Below the pieces are notes generated by a model. That model was not told where the DNA came from. It worked only from the letters and a program-made list of their open reading frames with translations, and did not search any database. A DNA stretch of 64,000 nt, taken from the IMG/VR virus record IMGVR_UViG_3300005529_000001, positions 248,001 through 312,000 of that record, one strand, 5' to 3'. Shown one piece after another: positions 16,443 through 63,507 of the stretch. The first letter of the stretch is position 1; every line of letters starts with the position of its first letter. The translations under genes were made by a program, and so were the position numbers.

Positions 16443-16508
16443 GAGAGAATCCTACCTTATCGTGAGGTAGGTATCCACCCACGCACAAAAACATCACACG
16501 TGGGCCCC

Positions 16509-16832
16509 TCAGGGCAGGAAAACCACCACCGAGACTGAGTCGGTGAGGTTGTGCAGCTGGCTCATCAGCCTGTTGTGCTCCCAAGCGTGCGGCTCTTCGC
16601 TCATGCAACCAAAATAGAGGAGGTTCCTGGCGGGAGTGTCGTGCTTGTCGTTAAAGCTGTCAGCGAAGTTGGCCAACACCAAGCACGTCATGTCATCGTC
16701 GATGCCGAAGCGGACGACCATCCCAGGCTCGACCTCGCCCACTGGGATGCGAGGCTCGCCAACGCCGTTGGCCCCGACGACGTGGAACCTACTCGGCAGC
16801 CCAGCTCTTCCGGACAAAGCCGCTGACGACAT
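16509..16832 (-). CDS. Hypothetical protein (start uncertain)
   Basis: Codirectional ORF filling the gap. Confidence 0.4.
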   Translation of the reverse strand: MSSAALSGRAGLPSRFHVVGANGVGEPRIPVGEVEPGMVVRFGIDDDMTCLVLANFADSFNDKHDTPARNLLYFGCMSEEPHAWEHNRLMSQLHNLTDSVSVVVFLP

Positions 16833-17046
16833 CGACCATCACCTTGGGACCCGTGTTGAGCACCACGCCCGTCCTGGGAACCCCATCATGCTTGTTGACT
16901 TGCAACGAGAAACCCGCGGACTTTGTCACCACAAAGGCCTGCGCCAGCAACATCCCGTTCACTTCTTGTGCAACCCGCATCGCAAGCGCACGTCCGTCGA
17001 GGCGGCTGCCGTTTGGGCGCCTGCGCTCTGTCCTATCGTTCTTCAT
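16789..17046 (-). CDS. Hypothetical protein
   Basis: ATG 17046 with GGAG SD just downstream of the tmRNA. Confidence 0.5.
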   Translation of the reverse strand: MKNDRTERRRPNGSRLDGRALAMRVAQEVNGMLLAQAFVVTKSAGFSLQVNKHDGVPRTGVVLNTGPKVMVDVVSGFVRKSWAAE

Positions 17047-17087
17047 GTGTCCATCTCCGTGCGATGCATCTGATCGCAACTGGGATC

Positions 17088-17457
17088 GGTGGAAGCGCCG
17101 GGAATCGAACCCGGGTCCGCAACTGCTAACCGTCTACGTCTACATGCTTGTCCCTTCTGGGTGTTCATCCTCGGGCGGGACTATCCGGTGGAACTTTTAC
17201 GACCAACACCGTCACGGTCGGCACTACGTTTTACGCCCAGCGCTTTGGCGTTTTTGCATCCAGGTAGCTGGGTGCGCCCCCACGCATTCTGTTGCTAGGC
17301 CGCGTGGTGCCCCAGACGATCAGGCCGCGAGGCGGACGTCGTCAGCGAAGCCGTTGTCGTTGGCGTTCATTCGTCACTGAGGTTTTTAGACCGGACCTTG
17401 GTGCCACCGGTGCATGCAGCAAACAGTCTCACGATCACGTCGAAACCTGTCGCCCCC
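17088..17457 (-). ncRNA. ssrA: tmRNA (transfer-messenger RNA), tag peptide (A)ANDNGFADDVRLAA
   Basis: 5' GGGGGCGACAGGTTTCGAC; 3' T-arm CCGGG-TTCGATT-CCCGG then CGCTTCC-A-CC; acceptor stem with G3.U70; helix 2 pairing GACTGTTTGC/GTAGACGGTT and TGCATG/CATGTA; tag ORF at 17364..17320; 370 nt. Confidence 0.95.
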
Positions 17458-17551
17458 AAATCATTGGGTGTGCTTGCTAGTGCTGGGTTGTCAATGAACA
17501 ACGGTTGTTACAACCGTCAAGACTGTATCTACCCCACCCAGGGACCGTTTT

Positions 17552-17965
17552 TCACCGCTTGTTGCCGCGGAACTTCCGGCTTGATGGTGCCGGGCCCTTT
17601 CGGGGATAGTTGTCGGGCAACATGTCAGTGTCTTCGGCAGACATGATGACAGGAATCGTTTCACGGTTGTCTTCGACAACTTGATCACCCGGTCCCTTGA
17701 GCTTGGCCGAGGTCTCAACATCGTGTTGGCCAAGCTTGCGTCGCTGGCCCTCAAGCCAGGAGTCAAGCGGGTCAACCATCTTGTTTCCCAAGCTAGCGAC
17801 AACGATCGACTTGACCCGGTTGTAGATCTGGCGAAGCTGCTCGTCAGTCGTCGCCCGCGGGTCACCCTCTATGTACTCTTTCTCAAATGGATGCTGGATC
17901 TCATACCTCTCGTAGAGGACGTTGTAGAGAGCCAACAGCTCCTTGGCATTGATGTTCAGCTTCAT
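17552..17965 (-). CDS. Hypothetical protein
   Basis: Likely start MKLNINAKELL at 17965, ATGA-coupled to the upstream ORF. Confidence 0.55.
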   Translation of the reverse strand: MKLNINAKELLALYNVLYERYEIQHPFEKEYIEGDPRATTDEQLRQIYNRVKSIVVASLGNKMVDPLDSWLEGQRRKLGQHDVETSAKLKGPGDQVVEDNRETIPVIMSAEDTDMLPDNYPRKGPAPSSRKFRGNKR

Positions 17966-18147
17966 GTCTCTTCTGCTTCTTGTTTCGCCTTGATGGCAGC
18001 CTCGAGCTTGGCTTGTTTCTCCGCTGCGAGTGCAGCCGGGAGCCGACGACGCCAGGTCGCAGCCTTCTCCTTGGACCGTGCGTTGAACCGCGTACGTTTT
18101 GCCTGCAACCGTCGGCGCTGGACAGACGTTGTTGTGGGTTTTCTCAT
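17962..18147 (-). CDS. Small basic (Arg/Lys/Ala-rich) protein
   Basis: GGGAG SD; 61 aa, strongly basic helix. Confidence 0.55.
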   Translation of the reverse strand: MRKPTTTSVQRRRLQAKRTRFNARSKEKAATWRRRLPAALAAEKQAKLEAAIKAKQEAEET

Positions 18148-18166
18148 GTCGGCTCCCGGACACTCT

Positions 18167-18466: not shown

Positions 18467-18570
18467 GATCTGTGTCTCCAAGTCAGCGACGGCCGTCTCA
18501 GGCCGCCAACCAGCTCAATCTAACACAGATGCGCAGAATGTGTACAACCGTTCGGTCGCTTACCGTGGCA

Positions 18571-19125: not shown

Positions 19126-19155
19126 CTGATCACCCCCGATAAGGGTCGTTATCTG

Positions 19156-19617: not shown

Positions 19618-19680
19618 GTGTTATCCTTGTGATAAGTAGGTCAGCGATCTGCTTAAAACAGACAGCCCCAACAAATCCTT

Positions 19681-19711: not shown

Positions 19712-19736
19712 AAACCTTTATCTTGTTTCCCTCACA

Positions 19737-24729: not shown

Positions 24730-24781
24730 CGGTGCACCCTCTCCGTGGTATGCTACCGACTAAATATGCAGACTGCAGAGA

Positions 24782-25279: not shown

Positions 25280-25774
25280 TCACCTGTTCTTACGTAGGTC
25301 TCTCAGAGCTAGTTGCCGTTGTAACGGCCCAACCCTGTCCAACATCAAGATACCGTTAAGATGATCGATCTCGTGTTGTACAATCCGTGCAGCCCAATCG
25401 ACAAAAGCTTCTTTGTGAGGTTTGCCCTCAACATCAAGGTACTCCACAACGACCCAAGCATGCCTGGGAACAGCTAATTTGACCCCAGGTAACGACAAAC
25501 AACCTTCATCATCTGTCGTCTTGTCGTGTGATGTATCAATGATTATCGGGTTGATTATTGCACGAAGTTCGTTTCCTTGTGCACCTGCGGTCGGATCCAT
25601 CACCAAGATCTGGATTGTTGAGTTCACTTGGGGTGCCGCGAGTCCCACGCCATCACCAGCGTACATTGCCAGCGTCATCTCCTCAACGAGCTTCGCCAAC
25701 GTAGCATCAAAACGCTCAACGGGAGCGCAGCTCCACTTGAGATCTGAGCTGGGATACTCAACGATGTTTAGCAT
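25280..25774 (-). CDS. def: Peptide deformylase
   Basis: GVGLAAPQV, EGCLS and QHEIDHLNG motifs all present. Confidence 0.95.
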   Translation of the reverse strand: MLNIVEYPSSDLKWSCAPVERFDATLAKLVEEMTLAMYAGDGVGLAAPQVNSTIQILVMDPTAGAQGNELRAIINPIIIDTSHDKTTDDEGCLSLPGVKLAVPRHAWVVVEYLDVEGKPHKEAFVDWAARIVQHEIDHLNGILMLDRVGPLQRQLALRDLRKNR

Positions 25775-26535
25775 CAGCCTGGTCTCTTCTTCCGAGCAGC
25801 CAATCGTTCCTTAACATCAGGCTGCTGCATCGCTGCGCGAGTCCGCTCTTTGATCAGTTGCTTTCGCTCATCTGTCATGTTCGCACGAGCGGTTTGAGAC
25901 TGCTTCTGACGGTACGCTGGATTGGTGTGGGCTGCTTTGATGTTGGCTCGTCCTTCTACGGACTGCAATCCCGCTAGTTGCTTCTCATGGACTTCAGGAC
26001 GTTGCATTGCTTCCATGGTTCGTTCAGAGACCATCTTCCGACGTTCGTCAGATGACATCTGCTCGACAAATTTGGCGTAACGCTCGGACTCGTACATTGC
26101 TTCAGACGTTCGTTTGGAGATCGTCTCGCGTACTTCGGGGCGTGACATTGCTTCACGTTGACGCTGCTTCCATGATGGATCAGCGAGGACCATGCCCTCA
26201 CGGGTGCGCTGAGAGATGAGTTGACGGGTTGCTTCAGACTTAGGACCTGATCCGTTGCCACCCTTCGTCATGTTGTAGCCGTTTGGCTTCTGCGTGTTGA
26301 GTTCCTTGATGTAGTAACGTTCGAAAGACTTAGCCTCCTTGAGTGTTTCAATACCGTCAAGGATCACTTCATGTGTGAACGCGTCAGGACCGTGTTCACG
26401 AATTGCTTTCATGAAGTCTTGCTCACCACCCTTGAAAGCACACGAAACATGTCCATCCCAACGACGTGTCATCGTCTGTTTGGTATAGCCGATATAACGC
26501 ATGTTTTCACGGGTGTGACAGTAGATCAGGTACAT
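25774..26535 (-). CDS. Free-standing GIY-YIG homing endonuclease with helical repeat tail
   Basis: LIY...YIGYT...RW..H, E..YI......PNGYNMTKGG; C-terminal basic helical repeats. Confidence 0.85.
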   Translation of the reverse strand: MYLIYCHTRENMRYIGYTKQTMTRRWDGHVSCAFKGGEQDFMKAIREHGPDAFTHEVILDGIETLKEAKSFERYYIKELNTQKPNGYNMTKGGNGSGPKSEATRQLISQRTREGMVLADPSWKQRQREAMSRPEVRETISKRTSEAMYESERYAKFVEQMSSDERRKMVSERTMEAMQRPEVHEKQLAGLQSVEGRANIKAAHTNPAYRQKQSQTARANMTDERKQLIKERTRAAMQQPDVKERLAARKKRPG

Positions 26536-26572
26536 GTAATGATCTTACGTCATCTCAACACAAGTGTAACGA

Positions 26573-33122: not shown

Positions 33123-33425
33123 TCAGTCTACGTCAAAGGTGATTGCCAGAGGGGGTCTCTGGGCCTCCAGCTGGTTGACTTGCTCGGCGGTTGGTCTCCA
33201 GCCCTCTTTCCACTGCACGGACCTGGGCTGTGCCCAGAACAGAGCGCAACGTTCACAACAGCCCACAGCACGCCAGGAAGCCTCATCGTCACGCGTCCGC
33301 ATCAAGCACTTGCAGACTGGACACGCTAGAGGAACGGGCGGCTCAGCGTCCGTTGGGACAATGACGACAAACCCCTCAGGTTGGTCTTCGATCAGACGGT
33401 CTCGGAGGTACGGTCTCCAGGCCAT
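33123..33425 (-). CDS. Small CxxC-CxxC zinc-finger protein
   Basis: CPVC...CERC. Confidence 0.55.
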   Translation of the reverse strand: MAWRPYLRDRLIEDQPEGFVVIVPTDAEPPVPLACPVCKCLMRTRDDEASWRAVGCCERCALFWAQPRSVQWKEGWRPTAEQVNQLEAQRPPLAITFDVD

Positions 33426-36016
33426 GCTTCACTGTACACCACCCGTGCATCCTTCTCGACCTTGTTCACCTCGATGATGTGGTCAGCAACGTCCTTGACA
33501 CCCTCGACATGAGTGATAACGATGATGGTCTTGAAGTACCTCTTCAGCGACATCAACAGCCGGTTGCACTGTTCGATCGAGGCTGGGTCCATCGGGCCAA
33601 ACGCTTCGTCAATGATGAACATGTCTGTCTTGGGCAACGATGAGAGATTGATCAGGGCGACACGGAGGGCAATGGAGGCCACTGTCTTCTCCATGCCCGA
33701 GCCTAGCTCGATCGGGCGGCGGCTGTCACCGTAGTTGATGTAAACTTCCATCGCATCGCTATCGTTGTCAACCTCAAGCTCGATGTTGAAATTGACAATG
33801 CCCGTGAGGATCTTGCTGATCTCCGCATTGATGACAGGTAACTGGCTGGTGATGATTAGGTTTGGTATTCCCTTCCGTGAGAAGGCTTGAGCGATCAACT
33901 CATGCGCTTTCATCAAGCCAAGCATCTTTTCACGTTGCTCGCGGTCCTGTTCCAGCTTATCATAGTTAGACTGTTCACGACCCTTCTTTGAAGCCAAGTC
34001 AAGTCTCTCACTGTCAACCTGACGGAGACGGCGGAGTAGGTCATCTTTCCGGTGACGAAGCGCAACTGCTTCAGCGTTCTCCTCGTTCTTAAGCGCTTCC
34101 TCGAGCTCAATGAGCTTCTGGTTCGCTTCTTTCACCCGAGGATAGAGGACGCTGTTGAGCTCGAGCATCTTCTTGTCATAATCACGTTGTTCGTCTGCTA
34201 ACTTGGTCAACAGGTCACCACGCATGTTACGCAGCTGGAGCAGCTTCGTTACCCGGTTGGACAGGTCCTCGTGGCGTAGCTCCACGAGCGCGTCATCTGC
34301 TTTGTTCAGCTTCTCCAACGCTTTTTCGACACGTTCCTTCTGCGGTTCGACCTTGTCTTTGACTTTATGCGCGTCCTTAATGAATCGGCAACCTGGGAAC
34401 TGATCACCACAGGGCACATCATCCAAGATTTTAAGCGACCGTTGTTGTTGCTTCAACAGGGCAGCTTCCTTTTCATGAACAACACGTAGCTGATCGACAG
34501 CGGCCTCAAGCGTCTTATAAGCCTCAAGCCTCTTCTTCAGTTCATCAACGTCATTGTCGCGGAGCAAAGCGTCAATGGTGCTGACCTTCTGTGACTTCTG
34601 GCTCATCGAGGTCACCAGGTCACTGATCTGTTCATTGACCTTGGCACCCTGGTCACGCAGTGACTGAAGATATGACCGTTGTTTCTCGACCTCCGTCGGG
34701 GTAACCATCACTACGTCCTTAAAGGACGATTCTTCTCGGGCAACATCGGTGAGCTGGACTTGGATGTCGTGCTTCTCGTGATCCTTGATCCCGATCTGGG
34801 CATCGAGGCTCTCGAGCGTTTCTTCAAACTTCCGTTGCGCCTCGGGCCAATCACGATCGGGCAATGACTTCAAGGCGGTTTTGTTAACGTTGACGTCATC
34901 CTTGGCTAGGTCATACATCTTGTCAAAGATGTCGAGATCCAAGAATCGTGCCACGGTCTGGCGCCGTTTGGTCGAGCCTTGGTTGATGTACTGTTTGATG
35001 TCGTCCTGTGCAGCGATGCTCGTCAGCAAGGCATCCTCGCCGCTGCCAATCAGCTTCCTGATGACACGGTCAGTGTCCTTACGTTCTTCACCACCCAAGT
35101 CTTCCAGTTCACCCCCATCGACAATTTTGAAGACATTAAGGTGAGTGTTAGCGTGCTGGCGGCCCCACTTGTCTTCGTGCTTAACGGTCTGGCGTTCGAT
35201 GATGTAGTCGCTGCCGCCCGAGTTGATGATGGCTCGGGCGTAAGCGTAGTCGTGCCGCACGTTGACAACATGGAGGTTCTTGATGCTACCGCGGTCCGAC
35301 GTGTTGAACAGGACGTACAGGATGGTACCCACCACTGACGACTTGCCCTGACGGTTGGGACCGAAGATGCCGACGATGCCATTCAGAGCATCGAAGTTGA
35401 TGATGTTCCCCTCACCGTACGCGAAACAGTTGTCCCACTTCAGGTTACGAAGTGTCCACTTGGTGTTCCGAGCCACCTCGTCGTTGCCCAGGACCTTGCC
35501 CAGGTAATGGATGATCTGATCACGAACAGCTTGCCATTCTGTCTCAGTAACGTGAGAAGACGTGTGATAGTCCTTCAGCAACCGTAACAGGACGTCCGGG
35601 TTGCGCAAGTCGTCCTTTGCAAGCGTCGCGGTACCAGCGCTGATCAGCTCCCTATCGAGTTGGTGATCTGTCTTGAAAGTCACCTCACTAGCTTTCAGCT
35701 GCTCTTGCAGCTGTGACATCAGCTTGGTCACTTCTTTTTGGGCCAGGATCTCTGTCTTGCTCCTGATGCGATACCGCGTACCAGGCGGGTAGTTAGCTAC
35801 CTTCTTCAGGGTCTTCTCAACGTCACCCGCCCAATCAACAGTCACAAACGGTTTCGGATTGGGCAGTTCTTCGAACTTGACATCAAACTTGTCCCTGTTC
35901 TCGATGTCCCACAACAGGTAACCGTGAACCAATGACTCGCCATAGTTTTGCTGGACCGGACTGCCGGGGTACGCGACCCACGGCCGCTTGACGCGGATCT
36001 TGATACGCTTGCTCAA
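33392..36016 (-). CDS. sbcC: SbcC/Rad50/gp46-like ATPase carrying the C-terminal part of SbcD at its N-terminus
   Basis: N-terminal YPGS..QQNYGE..HGYLLWD (SbcD C-half); Walker A GPNRQGKSS; coiled coil; GSGME signature; FIIDE Walker B; VITH; TTG start with GAGGTG SD. Confidence 0.9.
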   Translation of the reverse strand: MSKRIKIRVKRPWVAYPGSPVQQNYGESLVHGYLLWDIENRDKFDVKFEELPNPKPFVTVDWAGDVEKTLKKVANYPPGTRYRIRSKTEILAQKEVTKLMSQLQEQLKASEVTFKTDHQLDRELISAGTATLAKDDLRNPDVLLRLLKDYHTSSHVTETEWQAVRDQIIHYLGKVLGNDEVARNTKWTLRNLKWDNCFAYGEGNIINFDALNGIVGIFGPNRQGKSSVVGTILYVLFNTSDRGSIKNLHVVNVRHDYAYARAIINSGGSDYIIERQTVKHEDKWGRQHANTHLNVFKIVDGGELEDLGGEERKDTDRVIRKLIGSGEDALLTSIAAQDDIKQYINQGSTKRRQTVARFLDLDIFDKMYDLAKDDVNVNKTALKSLPDRDWPEAQRKFEETLESLDAQIGIKDHEKHDIQVQLTDVAREESSFKDVVMVTPTEVEKQRSYLQSLRDQGAKVNEQISDLVTSMSQKSQKVSTIDALLRDNDVDELKKRLEAYKTLEAAVDQLRVVHEKEAALLKQQQRSLKILDDVPCGDQFPGCRFIKDAHKVKDKVEPQKERVEKALEKLNKADDALVELRHEDLSNRVTKLLQLRNMRGDLLTKLADEQRDYDKKMLELNSVLYPRVKEANQKLIELEEALKNEENAEAVALRHRKDDLLRRLRQVDSERLDLASKKGREQSNYDKLEQDREQREKMLGLMKAHELIAQAFSRKGIPNLIITSQLPVINAEISKILTGIVNFNIELEVDNDSDAMEVYINYGDSRRPIELGSGMEKTVASIALRVALINLSSLPKTDMFIIDEAFGPMDPASIEQCNRLLMSLKRYFKTIIVITHVEGVKDVADHIIEVNKVEKDARVVYSEAWPGDRTSETV

Positions 36017-36729: not shown

Positions 36730-37734
36730 TCAACGTGAAAGAACGGTTCTTGACACAAAATCGAGCTTATCTCGAAACGATTCAAACCAAGAAAACGAAG
36801 GAGCGGAAGCAATCAGTTGCTTCATCTGTGCCTTCGTTAGGCTACCTGGATCGGCATCTTTGGGCAACCGAACAATTCTGACGGGTACATCGTAATCTAC
36901 TAGCTTCCTCGCAAGGACGGGTACCTTGGTGTACCTCATGTCATCATCCAGAGCTATCACGATGGGCGTGTTATGCGCAACGATAGCGTTAAACAACGTG
37001 CTCTCTTCGTTAAGATCGCTGCCTAACAGTGGAACAGAATTGTCTGGACACTTCACCAGATCGAAAGGACCCTCACACAAGACAAGCTCACGTGTCCAAT
37101 CGATATTCAGTTCATTGAAGATGATGGGTAGCTTGTCTTCATCTGGGTTGTCATACCGCTGTTTGAACTTGTCGATCGCTCTCCCCACGAAATAGTTCAA
37201 CTCCCCCTCGCCGTTGAAAGAGGGCATGATGACCCGTCGTTTCCACCTGGGATCATCGCTATATCCCAGCTTGAAATACCAGAGATCGCGTTCCGTCAAG
37301 CCACGACCCCTTGGCATCGGTTCCATCAAATACCGTCGCATCGCAAGGACATCAGGATCACGTAATGACGCAGTCGCCAGCAACTTGAAGTCCTTGGGTA
37401 AAGCCAGCTTTGGCTTCTCTTCCATGACGTCAATGATGAGACATCTCCGCCGGGGTCCCTCTTGGGCCGGCATGAACTTCTCAACGTACTCAAGCAGTTT
37501 GTCTCTGGTCGAGTATTTCTTCAGCAACGGTGCCAGGGTGTGAGCCTTGTACCCACACGACCAACAATGGCACCTGTCATCCTCGATCAGGATCGCTAGC
37601 TTCTTCTTGCTGTGATCTTTCGGAGCGCAGATGGGACAACGAACGTCAAAATTCTTGCCGTTCCTCGCTAGCTTTCCGCTGCCAAAACAGCTCTCGATGA
37701 ACCGAACTTTGTCTGAGATTGTGATCAGACCCAC
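36730..37734 (-). CDS. DNA primase-like protein (Zn finger + TOPRIM)
   Basis: CPIC..CWSC, LGY...RVIMP....YFVGR, LCEGPFD, ALDDD, DPG. Confidence 0.85.
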   Translation of the reverse strand: MGLITISDKVRFIESCFGSGKLARNGKNFDVRCPICAPKDHSKKKLAILIEDDRCHCWSCGYKAHTLAPLLKKYSTRDKLLEYVEKFMPAQEGPRRRCLIIDVMEEKPKLALPKDFKLLATASLRDPDVLAMRRYLMEPMPRGRGLTERDLWYFKLGYSDDPRWKRRVIMPSFNGEGELNYFVGRAIDKFKQRYDNPDEDKLPIIFNELNIDWTRELVLCEGPFDLVKCPDNSVPLLGSDLNEESTLFNAIVAHNTPIVIALDDDMRYTKVPVLARKLVDYDVPVRIVRLPKDADPGSLTKAQMKQLIASAPSFSWFESFRDKLDFVSRTVLSR

Positions 37735-37749
37735 GCGTCAATCGTAACC

Positions 37750-38352
37750 CTAGTCGTCCTTCTTGGACTTCTTGGGCTTTTTGACTTGGATAATGGGACC
37801 ATCGATCGCGGCCGCTCGAGCGATCACGTACGCATCCGTTGCATCACGTGACCAATCAACGATGAGACCGCTCTTCTTCAGAGGCCACTTAACTTCCTTG
37901 AGATCATGTTCCTGCATGTGCTTGAAGACCTGTTCCTTTTGCGACATGCCTGCCACAGAAGTTCGTTGGAGCTTGATCCCCACGGCCTTGCGGGCATGGT
38001 TAGCACTGATGTATTCAGGAGTAACGTTGTAGATCTTCCGTGCCAAGTTGCTGACAATGCCGTTGAACCGAAGCAACATTGAGATCGTCTGCGCACTTGA
38101 CATCCCGGGCCTAAAACCCATCAACGGCTCTTCCAAGACGACGCGGTCAATAACAACGTGATACTGCGCGTTCAGGGTTCCCTCGATCGCTTTAAGCGCG
38201 TGTTCAACCAGATCACACTTGTCCCAGAACGTTTTGCATTTCTTGAACTCGATCCTGTCTAACAGGTAGTGATCACCTGCAGGCCAATCGCTGTTAAGAA
38301 CGCAGTACCCCGTACACGAGGTGCTGACGTCAAGGCCCAAGATGACTGCCAT
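37750..38352 (-). CDS. RuvC-like Holliday junction resolvase
   Basis: ILGLDVSTSCTGY, VVLEEP, L.RFNG, KEQV, DATDAYVIA. Confidence 0.8.
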   Translation of the reverse strand: MAVILGLDVSTSCTGYCVLNSDWPAGDHYLLDRIEFKKCKTFWDKCDLVEHALKAIEGTLNAQYHVVIDRVVLEEPLMGFRPGMSSAQTISMLLRFNGIVSNLARKIYNVTPEYISANHARKAVGIKLQRTSVAGMSQKEQVFKHMQEHDLKEVKWPLKKSGLIVDWSRDATDAYVIARAAAIDGPIIQVKKPKKSKKDD

Positions 38353-38388
38353 GCACAGATCGTGGCCCACAAACACTCACAGTAAACT

Positions 38389-38787
38389 TTACTTCAACAA
38401 GCCAAGGAGCTTCAGCTCCTTCTCGGTCATTATCACCAAAGTGACACCGTGGGCTTGACACCACCCTGCAGCCGCCTTCAGCTTCTTCTGGACCCGAGCT
38501 TGGTCCAACTTCCGTTGGGGCTTGATCTCGACCAAAAGTTGTTGGCCATCTCGTAGTTGGACAAGGAAGTCAGGCCAGTATTGTCTGACTTTTCCCGTCT
38601 TTTTGTTCGAGATGTACTTGATCGACACATCTTCATACCGGTACCCCACGACGCTGTCATCAGCGTCTAGGTGTTGCATGTACGCAAACTCCCATCCCGA
38701 TCGGTAATGACACTCCTGGCCTGTCTTTGGAGACACATGGATGCCCGTGTGGTAACGCTTCTTCCGTTTTCGCTTTTTAGCTACCAT
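38389..38787 (-). CDS. gp4-like head completion nuclease (TnsA-like PD-(D/E)XK)
   Basis: YRSGWE...LD, YWPDFLV, VEIKP, K..AA. Confidence 0.8.
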   Translation of the reverse strand: MVAKKRKRKKRYHTGIHVSPKTGQECHYRSGWEFAYMQHLDADDSVVGYRYEDVSIKYISNKKTGKVRQYWPDFLVQLRDGQQLLVEIKPQRKLDQARVQKKLKAAAGWCQAHGVTLVIMTEKELKLLGLLK

Positions 38788-41671: not shown

Positions 41672-42493
41672 CTACACCACGATCCCAAGGTCCCTCATGA
41701 CCTGTCGGGTGATGTGGCGGTAATCGTTGAACCCGTTGGCCCGACTGTACTCTCGACCCGCCGCAGCGGTGTTCATCACCCGCTCCGTCAGCAGGAACTC
41801 TTCTGGTTTGACCTCCCAGATCTCCTTTGAACCATCGGTAAAGTAGACGATGAAGTCGGGCACGTGCCATCGCTTGTTGTTGTTATAGTAGTATGGGATC
41901 TTCAGGCTCTCGTATTCCCAGCCCTCGACCGTCGGGCTGGCGTCAAGGAACTTCATCGCCGCTTCCTCCCAGCTCGACTTGAAGAAGTGTTCCTTGGTAT
42001 TCTTCACCGACACGTAGGTTCCCTTCTTGTTCTGGGTGCCGTAGGACCGGAACCTGCCCTCAGTGATCGCCTGTGCCTTCTTCTCTGACATCTTGGCGCG
42101 CGTCTCTTCCGAGTGCTTGCGGCCGTACATGCCGTTGTTGGTGCCAGACCGCTTCTCACCCTTCGAGACCTCGCTCAGGTGGCGTTTCGTCTCCTCGGTG
42201 TGGCTCTTCCCCAGCCAGGGTCGCCATTCTCCTCGGGCTGCCTTTTCTTGGATCGTGGCTTTCGCTTTGGCGTGTGACGCAGGCGAGTTCAGTGCCTGGA
42301 TCGACTTCTGCCACGTCTCCGGGTGATCGTGCTTGTACTTGCCACGACACTTGTTGTCGCAGAAGTGCATCACTCCGCGATCCCTGGTCTTTGACCCTTC
42401 GATGATCGCTTCACAGGCATCACACTTGAAGCGATGGACAATGCTCTTGCGGTTGGTGACGAGAGATCGCCGCTCGATAATCTCCAGGAGCAT
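41672..42493 (-). CDS. Putative homing endonuclease: Zn motif + NUMOD3 + TnsA/gp4-like nuclease domain
   Basis: CDAC..FCDNKC; GKSHTEETK and MYGRKHSEETRAKMS (NUMOD3); KSSWE..HVPDF..EVKP; start moved to ATG 42493. Confidence 0.75.
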   Translation of the reverse strand: MLLEIIERRSLVTNRKSIVHRFKCDACEAIIEGSKTRDRGVMHFCDNKCRGKYKHDHPETWQKSIQALNSPASHAKAKATIQEKAARGEWRPWLGKSHTEETKRHLSEVSKGEKRSGTNNGMYGRKHSEETRAKMSEKKAQAITEGRFRSYGTQNKKGTYVSVKNTKEHFFKSSWEEAAMKFLDASPTVEGWEYESLKIPYYYNNNKRWHVPDFIVYFTDGSKEIWEVKPEEFLLTERVMNTAAAGREYSRANGFNDYRHITRQVMRDLGIVV

Positions 42494-42528
42494 GGCAATA
42501 AGTACCACGCACACTGGCGTTAGCAACG

Positions 42529-43773
42529 TCAAAAATCGAGGCGAACCCTAAAGGTCAGATCCCTCTCAGGCGACTTCTGGACGGGCCTGGACAACTTGGC
42601 GACCGCCAACAGGTTGTCGTTTGCGTCATACATGCCGACACTGGTGACGTACGTGAACGTCTGCTCGGTGTCTTCCTGACCCACATCGATGACAACGATG
42701 CGGTTTGTCGTGTCGGTGAACGTTGGGTTCGATGTGTAGTTGAACTCATCAGCTTCACACCTGCAGAAGATCAACGTTGAGTTGATGTTAGTGATGTTCT
42801 GAAACGTCAATGCTGTCTGTGATCCAGACCCCATGCGACAGGAAGCGATGTGATCAACGATGTTATCGATCGAGGCGCTGACCATAAAGTCAGGGATGAA
42901 CGCTGACTTGAACTGCGTCTGGGTACCCGAAGCTCCAAGGACTGTCGTTCCTGGCGGGGCCATCGCATCAATGGTTCCAGAAACGAATTGCGATCCTGAC
43001 GTGATCTTTGACATGTCAAGGACCAGGACCCCGCGATCATAGAACATCAAGCCCACGTTACGGGCGGTGTTTGCGCTGTCAACGACGTTGCCGACCTGCC
43101 CACCAAACGTCGACAGTTTGTTGGTCGCTGCTCCGATGTCAGTGTAGATAGCAGACCCTGACGTTGACGTGATAAATAGGTTGGGAACGCAGAGGTTGTT
43201 GGTCTCAGCTGGGTGAGTGCCGTCTCCAGTGCCAGCTGCTGATTCGTTGATCGACGCCGTCTGGAAGAAACGCATTGCGAACGTTTCACGCTTGATGCTG
43301 TCACGTGCAAACAGACGCTTGAACGCAACGAACAACGTGACATCCATCTGATCAGCGGGGTTGCTCGAATCGATCGGTGACGTGAACTTGCTTGTGGGTG
43401 AACCCAACAACGCGGTGGCAAACTGCCGGTAGACATCCATCTTCTCACGAACCATCAGCGATGAAGATGGGAACAGCTCCTTGCCAGCTGAGTCAACGCC
43501 AGTCTGGCTGGTCAGCTCAGTTGCTCCGCCCGGTTGCAAACCAACCGTCATGTCAAAGATGGAGTTGGCAGTTTGAAGGGTAAAATCCTGATCGTAAACA
43601 GTCTGGAACAGAGAGCTAGTGACTCCGGGACCGACGCCTCCCGTCACAAACACCTGGTACTTGCGACGAGAGACTGAACCGCTGATGTCCTGTTGAAGAA
43701 CATCGATCAACTGGTTCAAGAACGATCTAGCGGTCTTGATATCGCTGGGAAGAATCTCTTTGAACGTTGCCAT
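42529..43773 (-). CDS. Virion (baseplate-type) structural protein
   Basis: VGLMFYDRG, EFNYTSNPT, YVTSVGMYD..NLLAVAKLSRPVQK...RVRLDF. Confidence 0.65.
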   Translation of the reverse strand: MATFKEILPSDIKTARSFLNQLIDVLQQDISGSVSRRKYQVFVTGGVGPGVTSSLFQTVYDQDFTLQTANSIFDMTVGLQPGGATELTSQTGVDSAGKELFPSSSLMVREKMDVYRQFATALLGSPTSKFTSPIDSSNPADQMDVTLFVAFKRLFARDSIKRETFAMRFFQTASINESAAGTGDGTHPAETNNLCVPNLFITSTSGSAIYTDIGAATNKLSTFGGQVGNVVDSANTARNVGLMFYDRGVLVLDMSKITSGSQFVSGTIDAMAPPGTTVLGASGTQTQFKSAFIPDFMVSASIDNIVDHIASCRMGSGSQTALTFQNITNINSTLIFCRCEADEFNYTSNPTFTDTTNRIVVIDVGQEDTEQTFTYVTSVGMYDANDNLLAVAKLSRPVQKSPERDLTFRVRLDF

Positions 43774-57034: not shown

Positions 57035-57067
57035 CTGTTGTCTCCGCCTGTAAATAGGCTTCAGAGA

Positions 57068-59129: not shown

Positions 59130-59160
59130 ACCATACCCAACGCTGTGTGGTTTCTACAAC

Positions 59161-60468: not shown

Positions 60469-60513
60469 CAGTTCACCCTCTCAGGGCGTGCCATGCTGCC
60501 GCCAGCCTGGTTT

Positions 60514-60804
60514 TCAGGGGCGGCCTGCGTTTTTTTTCGCTGTTGACTGTTCACGAGCAAGGGCGGCGGGAGCCGCAACGACGGCCTGGTCAACAACCTT
60601 GCAGTATGACCGGAACCCACGATGGTAGCCTTCCTCAAGGGAGGCGTTGATGATCGCCATCAACTTTGTGACTTCCTCGGGCTTGATGTCAAGCTGCGAA
60701 GCTCGCAATGCTTGCGTCACGTTCGTTGACACGGCGTCTTTCATGCCCTCCATCAACGTCCAAGAGGCTTTGCTCAGCATGTCGCGCGGGTTCTTCTCTC
60801 CCAT
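60514..60804 (-). CDS. Hypothetical protein
   Basis: TAGAAT and GGAAGG SD upstream. Confidence 0.55.
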   Translation of the reverse strand: MGEKNPRDMLSKASWTLMEGMKDAVSTNVTQALRASQLDIKPEEVTKLMAIINASLEEGYHRGFRSYCKVVDQAVVAAPAALAREQSTAKKNAGRP

Positions 60805-60866
60805 GGTGCACCTTCCAACATTCTAGCTGCCTACTTAGAGCCAGTAAACCAGCAGAGGGGATCTCG

Positions 60867-62297
60867 ATGGCACCATCGCTCAAAGAACGGTACGACCAAC
60901 GCCAGCTGCAACTGCTCCAGGAACACACCAGAGCAGCTGACGCGCAACTGTTGCAAGAACAACAAACCGCTGAGTTGTTGCTCGAAGCGATGGATCCTGA
61001 AGACTTGCAAAAAGTCACCGCGATCGTTCAGAAACTAGACACGATCAAATCTCCAGAGCTTCCTCACCTGTCACAAGCGATCGAACAAGCCCAGGCTGAA
61101 CTAAACAAGTACACGGGTGGTGGGCCCATTGCTGCGGCTTGGTCCAAGCTAAAGACCAAGGTCGGTATCGATAACCCGGTCGTCAAGGTCACCACGTTTG
61201 CCGACGCTCTCGAGCGTGGGTTTTCACAGATCCCAACGATCTTGAAAAACAATGGGGTTGACCTCGCAAAAACGGATCTCAACAAGAGCTTGTCGACCAC
61301 GTTACAAACACAACAGCCCACTGGTGCTGGTGATGGTGAAGGCGGGACCAAGTCAAACGTTACAGGCAAAGCGAATGACAAGGAAGACCTTGAATACAAG
61401 CCCACGCCCAAGAAGATCGGGGCCAAGAGCGATGAAGAGCTGGGCAAAGCTCGCTTTGGTGACAACAGGAAGAACGACGAGACCCACTACGACATTCCAG
61501 GTCCATCTGGGACCCAACCCGGGACCAAGCCAGGAACTGCCCCTGCAACGGCAAAGAAACCGCCGCCAGCACAGCGCACAGGAGGCCAGGACCAGCCACC
61601 AAAACCCGCTCCTGGGGTGAAAAAACCGCTAGCAGCTAGCAGGAAGATCTCATCGGCTGACGAGGGACACAACCTTGATGAGGCAGGGCCGAGCGCGAGC
61701 GTTTCGGGTGATCAAAAGCTGAAGAACATTGTCGCTCAAATACGCAAAGCCCTAGCGCCGGGAGGCTTGTTTGGGGCATTCAAACGAATCCCATACATCG
61801 ATAGCGCTGCGCTTGCTCAAGAGCTTGTCCAAGCGCCAATCAAGGTCTTTTCGAACGTTGCAAAACGCATCCAAGCAGGAGCAAAAGCATCTGAGATCGC
61901 GCCTGACATGCGTAACCAGATCCAGGGCCAGGGTGACCAACAGACAAAGCACGCGAACACAGCGACTCCCACCAAACAAGCTGGGCAATCGCAACCCGGA
62001 CAGCCAGCCAAGCCGACCACGGCTACGACTGACACGACGAGCACCGGACAGCAGCCTCCCAAGGGTCCGGGTGAAAAACGTGGTGGTGGAGCCGAAGCGA
62101 AAAGCCCGAGCGAAGCGGGCGGAACATCTCCCTCTCAAAAAGCCCAGCAGTTTCGTTCGGGTCTTGACAAGATCTACAAGGGAGCCGGCGTTGATGCCAA
62201 CATGGGCCAGAAGCTCTTGAAGTACCTCATCAACAACAAACTCCTGGACCGCGGTGCCGTTGAAACACACGGTGCTGGTGAACCAAAAGCAGCCTAG
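60867..62297 (+). CDS. Hypothetical late protein with low-complexity linkers (possible head-internal protein)
   Basis: Start ATG 60867 with GAGGGG SD and TACTTA on the plus strand; LQE/LLE/LDE motifs; ends PKAA. Confidence 0.65.
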   Translation: MAPSLKERYDQRQLQLLQEHTRAADAQLLQEQQTAELLLEAMDPEDLQKVTAIVQKLDTIKSPELPHLSQAIEQAQAELNKYTGGGPIAAAWSKLKTKVGIDNPVVKVTTFADALERGFSQIPTILKNNGVDLAKTDLNKSLSTTLQTQQPTGAGDGEGGTKSNVTGKANDKEDLEYKPTPKKIGAKSDEELGKARFGDNRKNDETHYDIPGPSGTQPGTKPGTAPATAKKPPPAQRTGGQDQPPKPAPGVKKPLAASRKISSADEGHNLDEAGPSASVSGDQKLKNIVAQIRKALAPGGLFGAFKRIPYIDSAALAQELVQAPIKVFSNVAKRIQAGAKASEIAPDMRNQIQGQGDQQTKHANTATPTKQAGQSQPGQPAKPTTATTDTTSTGQQPPKGPGEKRGGGAEAKSPSEAGGTSPSQKAQQFRSGLDKIYKGAGVDANMGQKLLKYLINNKLLDRGAVETHGAGEPKAA

Positions 62298-63490
62298 GAC
62301 AGGTAAGCACCGAGCTGAGACAGGGTCTTGATGCACCTGTCGGCATGCACGCGCGCTGACATCTCAGTCGCCACAAGCTCACCTGTTTCAGTCACGCCAA
62401 AATCTACGGCAGACTTGATGGCACGAAGCGCGTTGTCGATGGCTTGCGAACAGACAACATAGTCTCTGTCATCAGGCAACCTGATGATGACATGGTTTGG
62501 GCTCAATGACTTGATCCGCTTGTCAAGGAGCTTTCCCTTGTCATCGACTTGTTCGTCTTCACGGCGCTTACGTAAGTTAGCGACATGTACAGCGACCTGG
62601 GCATGGGTGGAGGTGTTTGCAACGATCGTCCGGCCCTTGAAAACAGTGACCTGTTCAACGTAAGGTGCATCATGAAACTTGATCGAACTGATCAGATCAC
62701 CCTTGAGGCTTGACACTAGGTCAGCCCCACAAACAACCGAGAGATCGACCAAAGAGTTCATCCCGTCAAGATCAAACGGGGCGCTGATGGGCAACATCCT
62801 CAAGCTACCACGGTCATAGTTGACCTTCAAGGTGTGCTTGACATCATTGCTCATCCCACGAAGGAAAACAACGACGGGTTCTTTTGCTGTAGCAGCAGCT
62901 TCAAGCAAGTGATGGATCTCGGACACTTCTTCAACATACCCGTCGATGCAAACCACTCGCGGATGGACAAAGCTGGCGTCGATGGGCAAGATCGGGACCA
63001 AATCAAACGTGTAACCCCTCACAAGCTCAACGGAAGGAGTGAGGGAGTGTGTCTTCTCGATGATGATGCGGCCGCCGTAACCAGCTAGCTCGAGAGCACG
63101 TTCTAACATCTTTGTGGTACGAACTCCCGCTCGAGAAGCATGGGCGTTGACGAGGCTTCTCACGTCAGCGGCAGTGGCTGACCTGGGTTCCAATTGGGTG
63201 GGACGCGGGGGTACTTCAAGTGCACCCAATTTTTCAAGAACGAGGTCAACGGTGCGGTCAAAGCCCCCGGGACCCAATTTTTCTGCATGGAGGGCGTGGG
63301 TCATGATAGTTTCATGGACCGACCTGTCAAACTCAGAAGACATCTTCGAGTTGAAAACGACCTGCATGTGAGAGTGGACCAGCAAGCGGTCTTTCTCACG
63401 GACCAACGCCGCCCTGACATCCTTCATGGCAACAAGCCGAGCACGCACTCTCCTGAGCGTTGCTGCTGAATCAATGTTGACGTCTCCCAC
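62294..63490 (-). CDS. Divergent, truncated GroEL/cpn60-like chaperonin
   Basis: G.IIIE......ELVRGYTF, HHLLE.A....EPVVVF, TLKVN..RG, L.DL.VVCGA, LLDKRIKSL....IR, IDNALRA.KSAV..G match the GroEL intermediate/apical domains. Confidence 0.75.
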   Translation of the reverse strand: MGDVNIDSAATLRRVRARLVAMKDVRAALVREKDRLLVHSHMQVVFNSKMSSEFDRSVHETIMTHALHAEKLGPGGFDRTVDLVLEKLGALEVPPRPTQLEPRSATAADVRSLVNAHASRAGVRTTKMLERALELAGYGGRIIIEKTHSLTPSVELVRGYTFDLVPILPIDASFVHPRVVCIDGYVEEVSEIHHLLEAAATAKEPVVVFLRGMSNDVKHTLKVNYDRGSLRMLPISAPFDLDGMNSLVDLSVVCGADLVSSLKGDLISSIKFHDAPYVEQVTVFKGRTIVANTSTHAQVAVHVANLRKRREDEQVDDKGKLLDKRIKSLSPNHVIIRLPDDRDYVVCSQAIDNALRAIKSAVDFGVTETGELVATEMSARVHADRCIKTLSQLGAYLS

Positions 63491-63507
63491 CTGGAGACTC
63501 TACACCC

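What the first reader, a model, noticed from the sequence alone, without database searches (positions are those of the whole stretch)
16443..63502. Leaderless-mRNA grammar: -10 hexamer exactly 6 nt before the start codon
Seen: TAGGAT (16449-54), TAAGAT (26542-47), TACGAT (37741-46), CACGAT (38359-64) and TAGAGT (63497-502) each lie exactly 6 nt upstream of the ATG/GTG of the 59 aa ORF, GIY-YIG, primase, RuvC-like and GroEL-like genes. None has an SD in the gap. Late-type motifs also sit only 5-8 nt before the starts of gp13, the 13139 fibre gene and the 42493 endonuclease. Known: this spacing puts the transcription start on the start codon. Inference: the phage uses leaderless translation for replication and chaperone genes, which would tolerate loss of anti-SD function and hints at a host with efficient leaderless initiation.
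Basis: partly seen in the sequence, partly recalled or inferred. Interest (0 to 1): 0.6.

Follow-up and report, generated by a model that had tools for sequence, protein, structure and literature searches.

The report
Leaderless-gene promoters in a jumbo phage
This 369-kb soil phage places a full bacterial-type promoter so that transcription should begin on the A of the start codon at about 100 of its genes; this leaderless layout is already known from Deinococcus, actinobacteria and Thermus phages, but here it is unusually extensive and clean.

Summary
All five hexamers lie on the minus strand exactly 6 nt before an ATG or GTG. Genome-wide (369,475 bp, closed IMG/VR phage genome), TANNNT-N6-ATG occurs 155 times against 61±12 at other gaps. 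Of these, 113 open ORFs of at least 50 codons, and about 105 of about 507 genes carry the motif.

Conditioning only on TANNNT-N6-start reveals a complete promoter:
- a -35 box gTGAAa with an 18-nt spacer;
- a G-rich extended -10;
- C at -1 and A at +1.

The same promoter precedes tRNA genes, the tmRNA gene and short SD-containing leaders. It is therefore a promoter, not a ribosome-binding site.

Close relatives (about 75-85% aa identity) keep the boxes, spacing and start codon while the spacer and gap diverge. Distant relatives lack the pattern.

The grammar is concentrated at genome 60-85 kb, where about 40 small ORFan genes each have their own promoter. The window holds only a few weaker internal sites: 59-aa ORF > primase > GroEL-like ≈ GIY-YIG. 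RuvC has CACGAT, which is conserved but is not TANNNT.

No RNA data exist, so the transcription start is inferred. SD-led genes are also common, so "tolerates loss of anti-SD" is unsupported. This is a new member of a known kind.

The parts
16449..16454 (-). -10 hexamer TAGGAT, 6 nt before ATG 16442 of the 59-aa gene. This is the best promoter match in the window.
   Evidence: sequence. PWM trained outside the window scores 14.7, the top 0.9% of random TANNNT sites. TAGGAT is kept in relatives G002 (39% aa identity, gap 6) and G006 (80%, gap 7) with divergent flanks.
16473..16478 (-). -35-like GTGGAT (positions -36..-31) of the 16442 promoter
   Evidence: Partial match to the genome-wide -35 consensus gTGAAa.
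16263..16442 (-). 59-aa gene (MSARTEQLL...), predicted leaderless
   Evidence: Conserved protein in G006 and G002. No Pfam or PHROG family.
26542..26547 (-). TAAGAT, 6 nt before ATG 26535 of the GIY-YIG endonuclease gene (25774-26535)
   Evidence: The GIY-YIG domain starts at residue 2. Weak promoter score of 6.8, top 7% of the null. No orthologous site was available because the gene is probably mobile.
37741..37746 (-). TACGAT, 6 nt before GTG 37734 of the primase gene (36730-37734)
   Evidence: PHROG primase. TANNNT at -12 plus GTG is kept in L004 (TACGAT), L006 (TATGAT) and L007/8 (TAAGTT), and L005 has TAAGAT at 7 nt, while the gap sequence varies. Score 10.2, top 2.8%.
38359..38364 (-). 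CACGAT, 6 nt before ATG 38352, the true start of the RuvC-like gene (37750-38352). Not TANNNT, but it keeps A-11 and T-7.
   Evidence: N-terminus M[AT][VI]ILGLDVSTS is conserved. 'GGGC CACGAT ctgNNc ATG' is conserved in L004 and L005. PWM score is -3.
38382..38387 (-). Conserved GTTTAC at -35..-30 upstream of the RuvC-like start; candidate -35 box
   Evidence: Present in the window, L004, L005, L008 and L009 at the same place.
63497..63502 (-). TAGAGT, 6 nt before GTG 63490 of the GroEL-like gene (62294-63490)
   Evidence: PHROG chaperonin. GTG (VGDVN) is the only conserved start. TACAGT sits at the same place in L065-L067. Score 6.0, top 9%. Its full-length paralog at genome 135548 has TAGAAT-N6-ATG with a conserved CTGAAC -35 box.
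17526..17555 (-). Same promoter class (GTGAAA, 18-nt spacer ending in GGGG, then TAGATA) about 60 nt upstream of the tmRNA gene
   Evidence: PWM 14.5; sequence; tmRNA at 17087-17457. Shows that the motif drives a non-coding RNA.
33431..33436 (-). TACAGT with a 5-nt gap before ATG 33425 of a 100-aa ORF (33123-33425); a possible further leaderless site
   Evidence: PWM 10.1. Not followed up.
13148..13153 (-). Rare TATTTA(g) 'late-type' motif, 8 nt before ATG 13139 (gene 12288-13139)
   Evidence: Only 15 TATTTA copies in the genome, and about half lie 2-8 nt before a gene start.

Best explanation
The hexamers are the -10 elements of a sigma-70-type promoter class of this phage. Its consensus is gTGAAa (-36..-31), an 18-nt spacer whose last four bases are G-rich (G-16, t-15, G-14, G-13), TA[G/C][A/G][A/G]T (-12..-7), five variable bases, C at -1, and A at +1. 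At about 100 genes the A (rarely G) at +1 is the first base of the start codon. RNA polymerase should therefore produce an mRNA that begins with AUG, which the ribosome would engage through its 5'-terminal start codon without a Shine-Dalgarno sequence.

Shown here: the motif, its exact spacing, its independence from any SD, its use in front of non-coding RNA genes, and its conservation in relatives.

Inferred: that transcription starts on the start codon, and that these mRNAs are translated as leaderless messages.

The grammar is used mostly for an array of about 40 small ORFan genes at genome 60-85 kb. These are monocistronic units about 250-300 bp apart, often with exactly 32 nt between genes, with the preceding TGA stop inside the -35 box and with no terminators. 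In the window the same rule appears as a few weaker internal promoters in front of the 59-aa gene, primase, GroEL-like, GIY-YIG and, in degenerate form (CACGAT), the RuvC-like gene.

The polymerase is most likely host RNAP carrying the host primary sigma. The phage's own RpoD-like sigma, which lacks the -35 recognition helix, is an alternative reader.
For: Spacing:
- TANNNT at -12 in 78 of 507 starts, against 2.5 expected.
- Annotation-free gap-6 peak: 155 against 61±12, for ATG only.
- 113 of the 155 open ORFs of at least 50 codons and 77 have a stop within 10 codons upstream, against about 20 and about 7 at other gaps.

Promoter identity:
- The logo of 105 sites, conditioned only on TANNNT-N6-start, shows an unselected -35 box, a G-rich extended -10, C-1 at 0.77 and A+1 at 0.86.
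- The -35 box persists when sites with an overlapping stop codon are removed.
- A promoter-only PWM finds the same motif before tRNA-Gly (genome 981), tRNA-Ile (39368), the tmRNA (265519) and GGAGG-containing leaders of 11-31 nt.
- Cross-validated PWM hits have ATG/GTG at +1 in 15-44% of cases, against a 3.35% background.
- 42 of the 66 strongest hits give a 0-nt leader and 9 more give 1-3 nt.

Independence: the 105 proteins fall into 103 families, and non-motif positions carry no information.

Start codons: canonical N-terminal Rossmann and P-loop motifs begin right at the predicted starts.

Conservation:
- Genome 179861 versus L152, and GroEL-full versus L184/L185, keep both boxes, the spacing and the ATG while the spacer and gap diverge.
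- Primase, GroEL-like and 59-aa sites are conserved.
- Relatives G006, G007 and G010 reproduce the gap-6 peak and the same logo.

Literature: TANNNT about 12 bp upstream of the start is the accepted leaderless signature (PMC3160421). In Deinococcus deserti 47% of transcription start sites lie exactly on the start codon (PMC4007540). Thermus phages YS40 and Lalka27a are mostly leaderless (bioRxiv 10.64898/2026.04.20.719267).
Against: - No RNA run holds this genome, so no 5' end has been mapped. The start position rests on the usual -10-to-TSS distance and on the C-1/A+1 preference.
- In leadered promoter hits the A+1 preference at the same spacing is only modest (0.36-0.38 against 0.22).
- The PWM tests are partly circular because the PWM was trained on the leaderless sites. 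The cross-validated signal is weaker in the genome half that contains the window (15-22%).
- The window sites lack the gTGAAa box, and two of them barely exceed random TANNNT sites.
- GTG at gap 6 is not enriched in raw counts.
- TAGGAT, the commonest hexamer, contains AGGA at normal SD spacing, so an RNA-level role cannot be excluded for that subset.
- Gene calls come from my own simple codon-usage caller.
- The host is unknown.
Confidence: 0.75

Rival explanations
1. The hexamer is an RNA-level translation signal, an atypical or weak Shine-Dalgarno sequence such as UAGGAU/UAAGGU pairing with the 16S 3' end at 6-7 nt spacing. On this reading the genes are ordinary internal cistrons of long transcripts.
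For: TAGGAT is the commonest hexamer (18 of 105), and 43 of 78 hexamers are TA-purine3-T. AGGA peaks at offset -11. Intergenic gaps are short and terminators are not enriched in the dense array, so read-through transcripts probably exist on which such a signal could act.
Against: The fixed positions are T-12, A-11 and T-7, not the purines. Frequent hexamers such as TAGACT, TACAGT, TACACT and TACGAT cannot pair with CCUCC. The spacing is far sharper than that of the phage's own SD motifs, which spread over 3-11 nt. A conserved box 18 nt further upstream, and C-1, have no role in an SD model. The same motif precedes tRNA and tmRNA genes and SD-containing leaders.
Confidence: 0.07
2. The genome-wide grammar is real, but the five window sites are mostly coincidental. 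On this reading these genes (primase, RuvC-like, GroEL-like, GIY-YIG) are translated from polycistronic mRNAs by termination-reinitiation coupling to the gene that ends 10-40 nt upstream.
For: Each site follows an upstream stop codon by only 10-40 nt. None has the gTGAAa box. GIY-YIG and GroEL-like score only in the top 7-9% of random TANNNT sites, and CACGAT scores -3. GTG is not enriched at gap 6 genome-wide.
Against: There are 4 TANNNT sites at -12 among 62 window genes against 0.3 expected. All four score in the top 10% of the null (Fisher combined p about 8e-4, my arithmetic). The hexamer, spacing and start are conserved with a varying gap sequence for primase (four relatives), GroEL-like (three) and the 59-aa gene (two). 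CACGAT plus GTTTAC is conserved for RuvC.
Confidence: 0.15
3. The motif is a promoter, but transcription starts a few nucleotides away from the start codon, giving 1-5-nt leaders or starts inside the codon. On this reading the mRNAs are 'near-leaderless', or the annotated ATG is not the one used.
For: Minor classes with 5-, 7- and 8-nt gaps exist (12 sites at offset -13; CATG variants). TSS choice by RNAP can vary by ±1-2 nt.
Against: The peak is a single offset. C-1/A+1 matches the usual pyrimidine/purine pair at a transcription start. In Deinococcus deserti and Thermus phages with the same geometry the mapped 5' end is the A or G of the start codon (PMC4007540; bioRxiv 10.64898/2026.04.20.719267).
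Confidence: 0.1
4. The signal is an artefact of tandemly duplicated gene cassettes that share upstream sequence, or of upstream TGA stop codons sitting at a fixed distance.
For: Sites cluster at 60-85 kb. Several neighbouring genes are each 84 aa. 16-24 sites have the upstream TGA stop exactly at -35..-33.
Against: The 105 proteins form 103 families. Positions outside the boxes have about 0 bits. The -35 consensus survives removal of stop-overlapping sites, and TGC/TGT (not stop codons) are the next most common triplets. Sites occur all round the genome and in independent relatives.
Confidence: 0.02

Closest known systems
TA-led (leaderless) genes of bacteria: TANNNT about 12 bp upstream of the start codon (Zheng et al. 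2011, PMC3160421; Deinococcus deserti, PMC4007540)
   Same: Same hexamer (TANNNT with weakly informative middle bases), same position (-12..-7), ATG/GTG at +1, no SD, and coexistence with SD-led genes. About 21% of genes here, similar to Actinobacteria (19%).
   Different: This is a phage genome, not a cell. It has a well-defined -35 box (gTGAAa, 18-nt spacer) and a G-rich extended -10, and the sites are concentrated in one gene array. 5' ends are not mapped here.
Thermus phages phiYS40 and Lalka27a (bioRxiv 10.64898/2026.04.20.719267, citing the YS40 work)
   Same: Phages whose transcripts mostly start on the A or G of the initiator codon. Lalka27a late promoters have a TAGGGT -10, very like the TAGGAT/TAGGGT seen here.
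   Different: Those are experimentally mapped; this one is not. By the preprint's account some of their promoter classes lack a -35 element, whereas this class has one. Here only about a fifth to a quarter of genes are involved. This phage is a 369-kb jumbo phage from soil with a T4-type capsid and an unknown host.
Cluster O mycobacteriophage SigA-like promoters (PMC4351075)
   Same: Phage promoters predicted from sequence to give leaderless mRNAs, with +1 on the first base of the start codon.
   Different: A handful of promoters per genome there, against about 100 here. Different phage type and host.
Jumbo phages with mapped transcriptomes: phiKZ (PMC8244752) and AR9 (PMC5312081)
   Same: Similar genome size class and many small early genes.
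   Different: phiKZ has no leaderless transcripts and AR9 has 26-491-nt leaders. Both use phage RNA polymerases with unrelated promoters. This phage uses sigma-70-type promoters.
T4 early and late promoters (from my own knowledge, not tested here)
   Same: The capsid is T4-type. There are arrays of small early genes each with its own sigma-70-type promoter, and a rare A/T-rich motif (TATTTAg) close to late-type gene starts recalls the T4 late TATAAATA.
   Different: T4 mRNAs are leadered and have SD sequences. The -35 and -10 consensus differs. No gp55-type factor was looked for.

Membership tests
Bacterial leaderless (TA-led) genes | -10-type hexamer TANNNT with its first T about 12 nt upstream of the start codon, as a sharp positional peak | tested here: met
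   78 of 507 at -12 against 2.5 expected; gap-6 z = 7.7. In the window: 4 TANNNT sites plus 1 CACGAT.
Bacterial leaderless (TA-led) genes | No Shine-Dalgarno sequence between promoter and start codon | tested here: met
   The gap is 6 nt. Only the TAGGAT subset (18 of 105) contains an AGGA core.
Bacterial leaderless (TA-led) genes | The hexamer is part of a real promoter (other promoter elements present, used for other transcripts) | tested here: met
   -35 box, G-rich extended -10, C-1/A+1. Same motif before tRNA, tmRNA and SD leaders. Footprint in relatives.
Bacterial leaderless (TA-led) genes | Mapped 5' end of the mRNA coincides with the A or G of the start codon | not testable with these tools
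   No RNA run holds the genome. Read laying gave DNA contigs only.
Bacterial leaderless (TA-led) genes | 5'-terminal AUG/GUG mRNA is translated (protein detected, or reporter active) | not testable with these tools
   Indirect evidence only: conserved ORFs and canonical N-termini at these starts.
Leaderless transcription programme of Thermus phages (YS40/Lalka27a type) | Most phage transcripts are leaderless | tested here: inconclusive
   Predicted: 64% of the 66 strongest promoter hits give a 0-nt leader and 14% give 1-3 nt. But only about 21% of genes carry the motif and up to about 40% have SD-like motifs.
Leaderless transcription programme of Thermus phages (YS40/Lalka27a type) | Sequence relatedness to these phages, or a Thermus host | not tested
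   The capsid's nearest relatives are uncultured huge phages and Microcystis, Flavobacterium and Rhodothermus phages. The host is unknown.
Sigma-70 (group 1/2) dependent promoters | -35 and -10 hexamers 16-18 nt apart, matching TTGACA/TATAAT | tested here: inconclusive
   The architecture and spacing (18 nt) fit, but the E. coli-consensus scanner finds only 1 site in 8 kb holding about 25 predicted promoters, because the boxes are gTGAAa and TAGRRT.

The most novel reading that the evidence does not exclude
The phage may run an autonomous leaderless expression programme. About 40 tandem mini-genes without terminators would each be translated only from their own 5'-terminal AUG. The stop codon of one gene is built into the -35 box of the next, with a fixed 32-nt spacer. 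The promoter class would be read not by the host primary sigma alone but by the phage's own RpoD-like sigma, which lacks the region-4.2 recognition helix, together with an unknown factor that binds the gTGAAa box, in the way T4 MotA/AsiA appropriates sigma. That would uncouple early phage protein synthesis from SD/anti-SD pairing and from host promoter specificity.
Probability: 0.15. Interest if true: 0.7.

Novelty: new member of a known kind. Interest (0 to 1): 0.45.

Why it matters
1. Annotation. Gene callers that rely on an RBS will misplace starts or miss the small genes of this phage clade. The TANNNT-N6-ATG rule fixes about 100 start codons to the nucleotide and reveals small genes that my own caller missed.
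2. Host prediction. An abundant leaderless grammar narrows the likely host of an uncultured 369-kb soil phage to leaderless-rich phyla, and offers a sequence-only host signal for huge phages.
3. Biology. It extends leaderless phage expression, mapped so far mainly in Thermus phages, to a jumbo phage with a T4-type capsid. It also gives a very clean set of natural promoters (about 100 independent instances plus orthologues) for studying TSS placement, dual stop-codon/-35 coding, and a phage sigma that lacks the -35 reading helix.
4. Tools. The compact promoter-ATG cassettes could serve as parts for expression in leaderless-proficient bacteria.

Tried and rejected
- Megablast of 8 kb against GenBank phages gave no match.
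- Sequencing runs: only DNA holders were found (a soil metagenome, which is the probable source, and a mine metagenome) and no RNA. The decisive 5'-end test was therefore impossible.
- Read laying (6,000 letters) was used to ask whether natural variants avoid motif positions. None of the 19 SNPs fell in motif positions, but only about 1.2 were expected, so the result is not significant.
- Host identification through the phage sigma failed. Its bacterial homologues are 35-47% identical across many phyla. The atlas neighbours are viral clusters plus Gemmatimonadota and Actinomycetota. This is not enough to name a host.
- Phage-encoded helpers of leaderless translation: no IF3 C-domain and no S21. 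Other factors were not searched.
- The second 'sigma' hit (genome 48968) is an aminotransferase ORF, not a sigma.
- The E. coli-consensus promoter scanner does not see these promoters, and terminators are not enriched.
- No relatives were found for a 237-aa early protein.
- Distant relatives (G003, G004, G005; GC 34-46%) lack the gap-6 peak, so the grammar is not a trait of the wider phage lineage.
- The paralogous-duplication artefact and the stop-codon artefact were tested and rejected.
- A TAAAGT hexamer at 38386-38391 could be an alternative leadered promoter for the RuvC-like gene, but it is not conserved as TANNNT in relatives, whereas GTTTAC and CACGAT are.
- No alternative genetic code was used. 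The large protein-representative search, structure prediction and complex prediction were not needed.

Full report
WHAT THE WINDOW IS. The window is bases 248,001-312,000 of a single closed 369,475-bp contig. It is an IMG/VR virus record with direct terminal repeats, estimated 100% complete, GC 56%. It carries about 55 tRNA genes and a tmRNA and a distant T4-type major capsid protein. The capsid's nearest relatives are uncultured huge phages and phages of Microcystis, Flavobacterium and Rhodothermus. The DNA is held by a soil metagenome, which is probably its source, and near-identical variants are held by a mine metagenome. No RNA run holds it. Nearly all window genes are on the minus strand.

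CHECK OF THE OBSERVATION. All five hexamers are on the minus strand at the stated coordinates, and each is followed by exactly six bases and a start codon.
- Gene identities are confirmed: GIY-YIG (Pfam, domain from residue 2), and primase, RuvC-like resolvase and GroEL-like chaperonin (PHROGs).
  - The RuvC-like protein starts at ATG 38352, not at the upstream GTG 38376, because the N-terminus M-[AT]-[VI]-I-L-G-L-D-V-S-T-S is conserved in relatives.
  - GTG 37734 (primase) and GTG 63490 (GroEL-like) are the only conserved starts.
  - The 59-aa ORF is a conserved gene.

IS IT MORE THAN CHANCE? I built a simple codon-usage gene caller for the whole genome: 507 genes, 88% coding.
- TANNNT begins at offset -12 from the longest-ORF start in 78 genes. 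About 2.5 are expected at any offset, and offsets -13 and -11 have 12 and 7.
- Without any annotation, TANNNT-N6-ATG occurs 155 times on the two strands, against 61±12 for gaps 0-20 (z = 7.7). There is no excess for GTG, TTG or CTG.
- 113 of the 155 open an ORF of at least 50 codons, and 77 have an in-frame stop within 10 codons upstream. Other gaps give about 20 and about 7.
- Within the window alone, 4 of 62 genes have TANNNT at -12 against 0.3 expected.

WHAT THE MOTIF IS. I collected the 105 genes with TANNNT-N6-ATG/GTG at, or within 50 codons of, the longest start and made a logo. Positions I had not selected on are strongly informative:
- G-36, T-35, G-34, A-33, A-32 and A/C-31, giving gTGAAa with an 18-nt spacer to the -10;
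- G-16, T-15, G-14 and G-13;
- a purine-rich hexamer interior (TAGGAT, TAGACT and TAGAGT are the commonest);
- C at -1 (0.77) and A at +1 (0.86).

The remaining positions carry about 0 bits. This is a complete sigma-70-type promoter whose expected start, the seventh base after the hexamer and a purine preceded by a pyrimidine, is the A of the start codon.

Further evidence that the motif is a promoter and not a ribosome-binding site:
- A PWM built only from -38..-7 also finds the motif 6 nt before tRNA-Gly (genome 981), 30 nt before tRNA-Ile (39368), and about 60 nt before the tmRNA (window 17526-17555).
- The same PWM finds the motif in front of 11-31-nt leaders that carry GGAGG.
- In cross-validation (train on one genome half, test on the other), 15-44% of hits have ATG/GTG exactly at +1, against a background of 3.35%.
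- Among the 66 strongest hits the predicted leader is 0 nt in 42 and 1-3 nt in 9. At random positions a 0-nt leader occurs in 1.3%.

CONTROLS.
- Not a duplication artefact: the 105 proteins form 103 families.
- Not a stop-codon artefact: the -35 consensus survives when sites with an overlapping stop are removed, and TGC/TGT are the next most common triplets.
- Start codons are independently fixed by canonical N-terminal motifs that begin at residue 2-6: MHVLVTGGAGFI, MKNVLVTGAAGF, MIIVLSGEAGAG and MKSIAVVGQGFV.
- Start-codon use is 91 ATG, 14 GTG and 0 TTG, as expected for leaderless initiation.

COMPARATIVE EVIDENCE.
- Close relatives from other samples (about 62-85% aa identity, GC 58-62%) keep the boxes and the spacing while everything between diverges.
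- At genome 179861 versus L152, GTGAAA, TAGGAT and ATG are identical but the 14-nt spacer core and the 6-nt gap are unrelated. The full-length GroEL paralog (135548) behaves the same way in L184 and L185.
- In relatives' contigs G006 (127 kb), G007 (72 kb) and G010 (28 kb), the gap-6 count is 17, 26 and 7 against about 5, almost all opening ORFs. Their logo reproduces T-35, G-34, G-16, G-14, G-13 and C-1.
- Distant relatives sharing the primase (38-45% identity, GC 34-46%) have no peak. The grammar therefore belongs to this clade, and presumably to its host, not to the wider phage lineage.

WHERE IT IS USED. 80 of the 105 sites lie in the first half of the genome.
- The 60-85 kb segment has 42 strong promoter hits for 43 called genes. 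Nearly every small gene (60-100 aa, no PHROG family) has its own promoter-ATG unit.
- Intergenic distances are often exactly 32 nt, and in 24 cases the upstream gene's TGA stop is the TGA of the -35 box.
- Intrinsic terminators are not enriched there, so nested read-through transcripts are likely.

The window holds only a handful of sites, and none has the gTGAAa box. With a PWM trained outside the window and calibrated on 3,418 random TANNNT sites (95th percentile 8.2), the window sites score as follows:
- 59-aa gene: 14.7 (top 0.9%);
- primase: 10.2 (top 2.8%);
- GIY-YIG: 6.8 (top 7%);
- GroEL-like: 6.0 (top 9%);
- combined p about 8e-4.

Conservation at each window site:
- Primase: TACGAT, TACGAT, TATGAT and TAAGTT at -12, and TAAGAT at -13, each before a conserved GTG.
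- GroEL-like: TA[G/C]AGT is kept.
- 59-aa gene: TAGGAT is kept down to 39% protein identity.
- RuvC-like: CACGAT is not TANNNT (PWM -3), but it keeps A-11 and T-7, and it is conserved together with an upstream GTTTAC at -35..-30. I regard this as a plausible weak promoter.
- GIY-YIG: no orthologous comparison was possible.

My ranking of confidence that each is a leaderless start: 59-aa about 0.75, primase about 0.65, GroEL-like about 0.55, RuvC-like about 0.45, GIY-YIG about 0.4.

- 'Late-type motif'. TATTTA(g) is rare (15 copies) and about 60-fold enriched upstream of genes that have neither an SD nor the main motif. About half of the copies lie 2-8 nt before a start codon, including 13139. 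Others precede SD-containing leaders. The 42493 site does not carry it. This is a second, small promoter-like class that may also give very short leaders.
- 'Tolerates loss of anti-SD'. This is not supported. 84 genes have 5-mer and 126 have 4-mer SD cores at 3-11 nt, against 6% and 9% in an internal control. The same promoter class also drives GGAGG leaders.

WHO READS THE PROMOTER. The phage encodes one sigma-70-family protein (genome 33359-34174, 271 aa). It is most similar to RpoD/RpoS and has regions 2, 3 and 4.1. It ends about 20 residues into region 4.2 and so lacks the helix that reads the -35 hexamer, and no other frame continues it. Two possibilities remain:
- the host primary sigma reads gTGAAa/TAGRRT, which is likely for early genes; or
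- the phage sigma reads the extended -10 while another factor reads the -35 box.
I cannot decide between them.

MECHANISM (shown versus inferred).
- Shown: the promoter architecture, its fixed register with the start codon, its independence from an SD, its use for non-coding RNAs, and its conservation.
- Inferred from established knowledge of -10-to-TSS geometry, and from mapped systems with the same geometry (Deinococcus deserti, PMC4007540; Thermus phages, bioRxiv 10.64898/2026.04.20.719267; the general rule in PMC3160421): transcription starts on the A or G of the start codon, and the 5'-terminal AUG is bound directly by ribosomes.

COMPARISON WITH WHAT IS KNOWN, AND NOVELTY.
- The rule 'TANNNT about 12 bp upstream of the start = leaderless' is established (PMC3160421).
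- Phages with mostly leaderless transcripts are known (Thermus phages YS40 and Lalka27a), and a few leaderless promoters are predicted in Cluster O mycobacteriophages (PMC4351075).
- The jumbo phages with mapped transcriptomes, phiKZ and AR9, have none (PMC8244752, PMC5312081).
- This is therefore a new member of a known kind.
- The new points are its scale and cleanness in a 369-kb phage with a T4-type capsid, the stop-codon/-35 overlap in a fixed 32-nt spacer array, and the truncated phage sigma.

LIMITS.
- There are no RNA data.
- The gene caller is my own.
- The PWM is partly circular.
- The host is unknown.
- The SNP test was underpowered.

Noticed in passing
window 17087-17457 (-), promoter 17526-17555: The phage encodes a one-piece tmRNA (Rfam RF00023, 87 bits) with tag ANDNGFADDVRLAA. 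It is preceded about 60 nt upstream by the same GTGAAA/GGGG-TAGATA promoter class.
   Followed up: partly
window 13148-13153, 24761-24766, 57051-57056; genome 152646, 200717, 228198, 241223: A rare TATTTA(g) motif: 15 copies in the genome, and TATTTAG is about 60-fold enriched upstream of genes. About half the copies lie 2-8 nt before a start codon and others precede SD leaders. This may be a T4-late-like promoter class. No gp55-type factor was searched for.
   Followed up: partly
genome 33359-34174 (-), outside the window (L063:360-1175): A phage RpoD/RpoS-like sigma factor of 271 aa. It ends shortly after region 4.1 and so lacks the region-4.2 helix that reads the -35 hexamer. Close relatives' fragments (G006-G010) show no sigma, but they are incomplete.
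   Followed up: partly
genome 60-85 kb (L001), e.g. 66545, 67618, 68545, 70116, 70403, 70690: An array of about 40 small ORFan genes, each with its own promoter-ATG unit. The intergenic distance is often exactly 32 nt. In 24 leaderless sites genome-wide, the upstream gene's TGA stop codon is the TGA of the next gene's -35 box. Terminators are not enriched.
   Followed up: yes
L001 6582..7161 (genome 66582-67161): In two mine-metagenome runs, a 578-bp stretch holding two of the small leaderless cassettes is replaced by 36 other bases. This suggests cassette-level turnover in the early-gene array.
   Followed up: no
genome 36781-36856 (-), 336639-336792 (+): ARAGORN calls a tRNA with anticodon CTA (an amber-suppressor type) and two adjacent tRNA-like genes with a 'ttca' loop. 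Stop-codon use in called genes is TGA 412, TAG 49, TAA 46. I saw no sign that an alternative genetic code is needed.
   Followed up: no
window 62294-63490 (-) and genome 133899-135548 (-): There are two GroEL-like paralogs: a short one of 398 aa in the window (matching PHROG chaperonin positions 213-433) and a full-length one of 549 aa elsewhere. Both carry the TANNNT-N6-start arrangement.
   Followed up: partly
window 25774-26535, 38389-38787, 41672-42532 (all -): Three probable homing or mobile endonuclease genes are interspersed with replication genes: a GIY-YIG, a TnsA-like N-terminal-domain protein, and a NUMOD3 + TnsA-like protein.
   Followed up: no
window 33431-33436 / ATG 33425 (-); window 59123 (-): Further promoter-like hits close to starts: TACAGT with a 5-nt gap before a 100-aa ORF that my caller missed, and TATGGT whose predicted start is 3 nt before ATG 59120 inside the ORF listed from GTG 59129.
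   Followed up: no
genome-wide: My RBS-free caller missed several small genes that the promoter-ATG rule reveals, for example starts at genome 65676, 66204 and 78732. Standard annotation of this phage clade probably undercounts small genes and misplaces some starts.
   Followed up: partly
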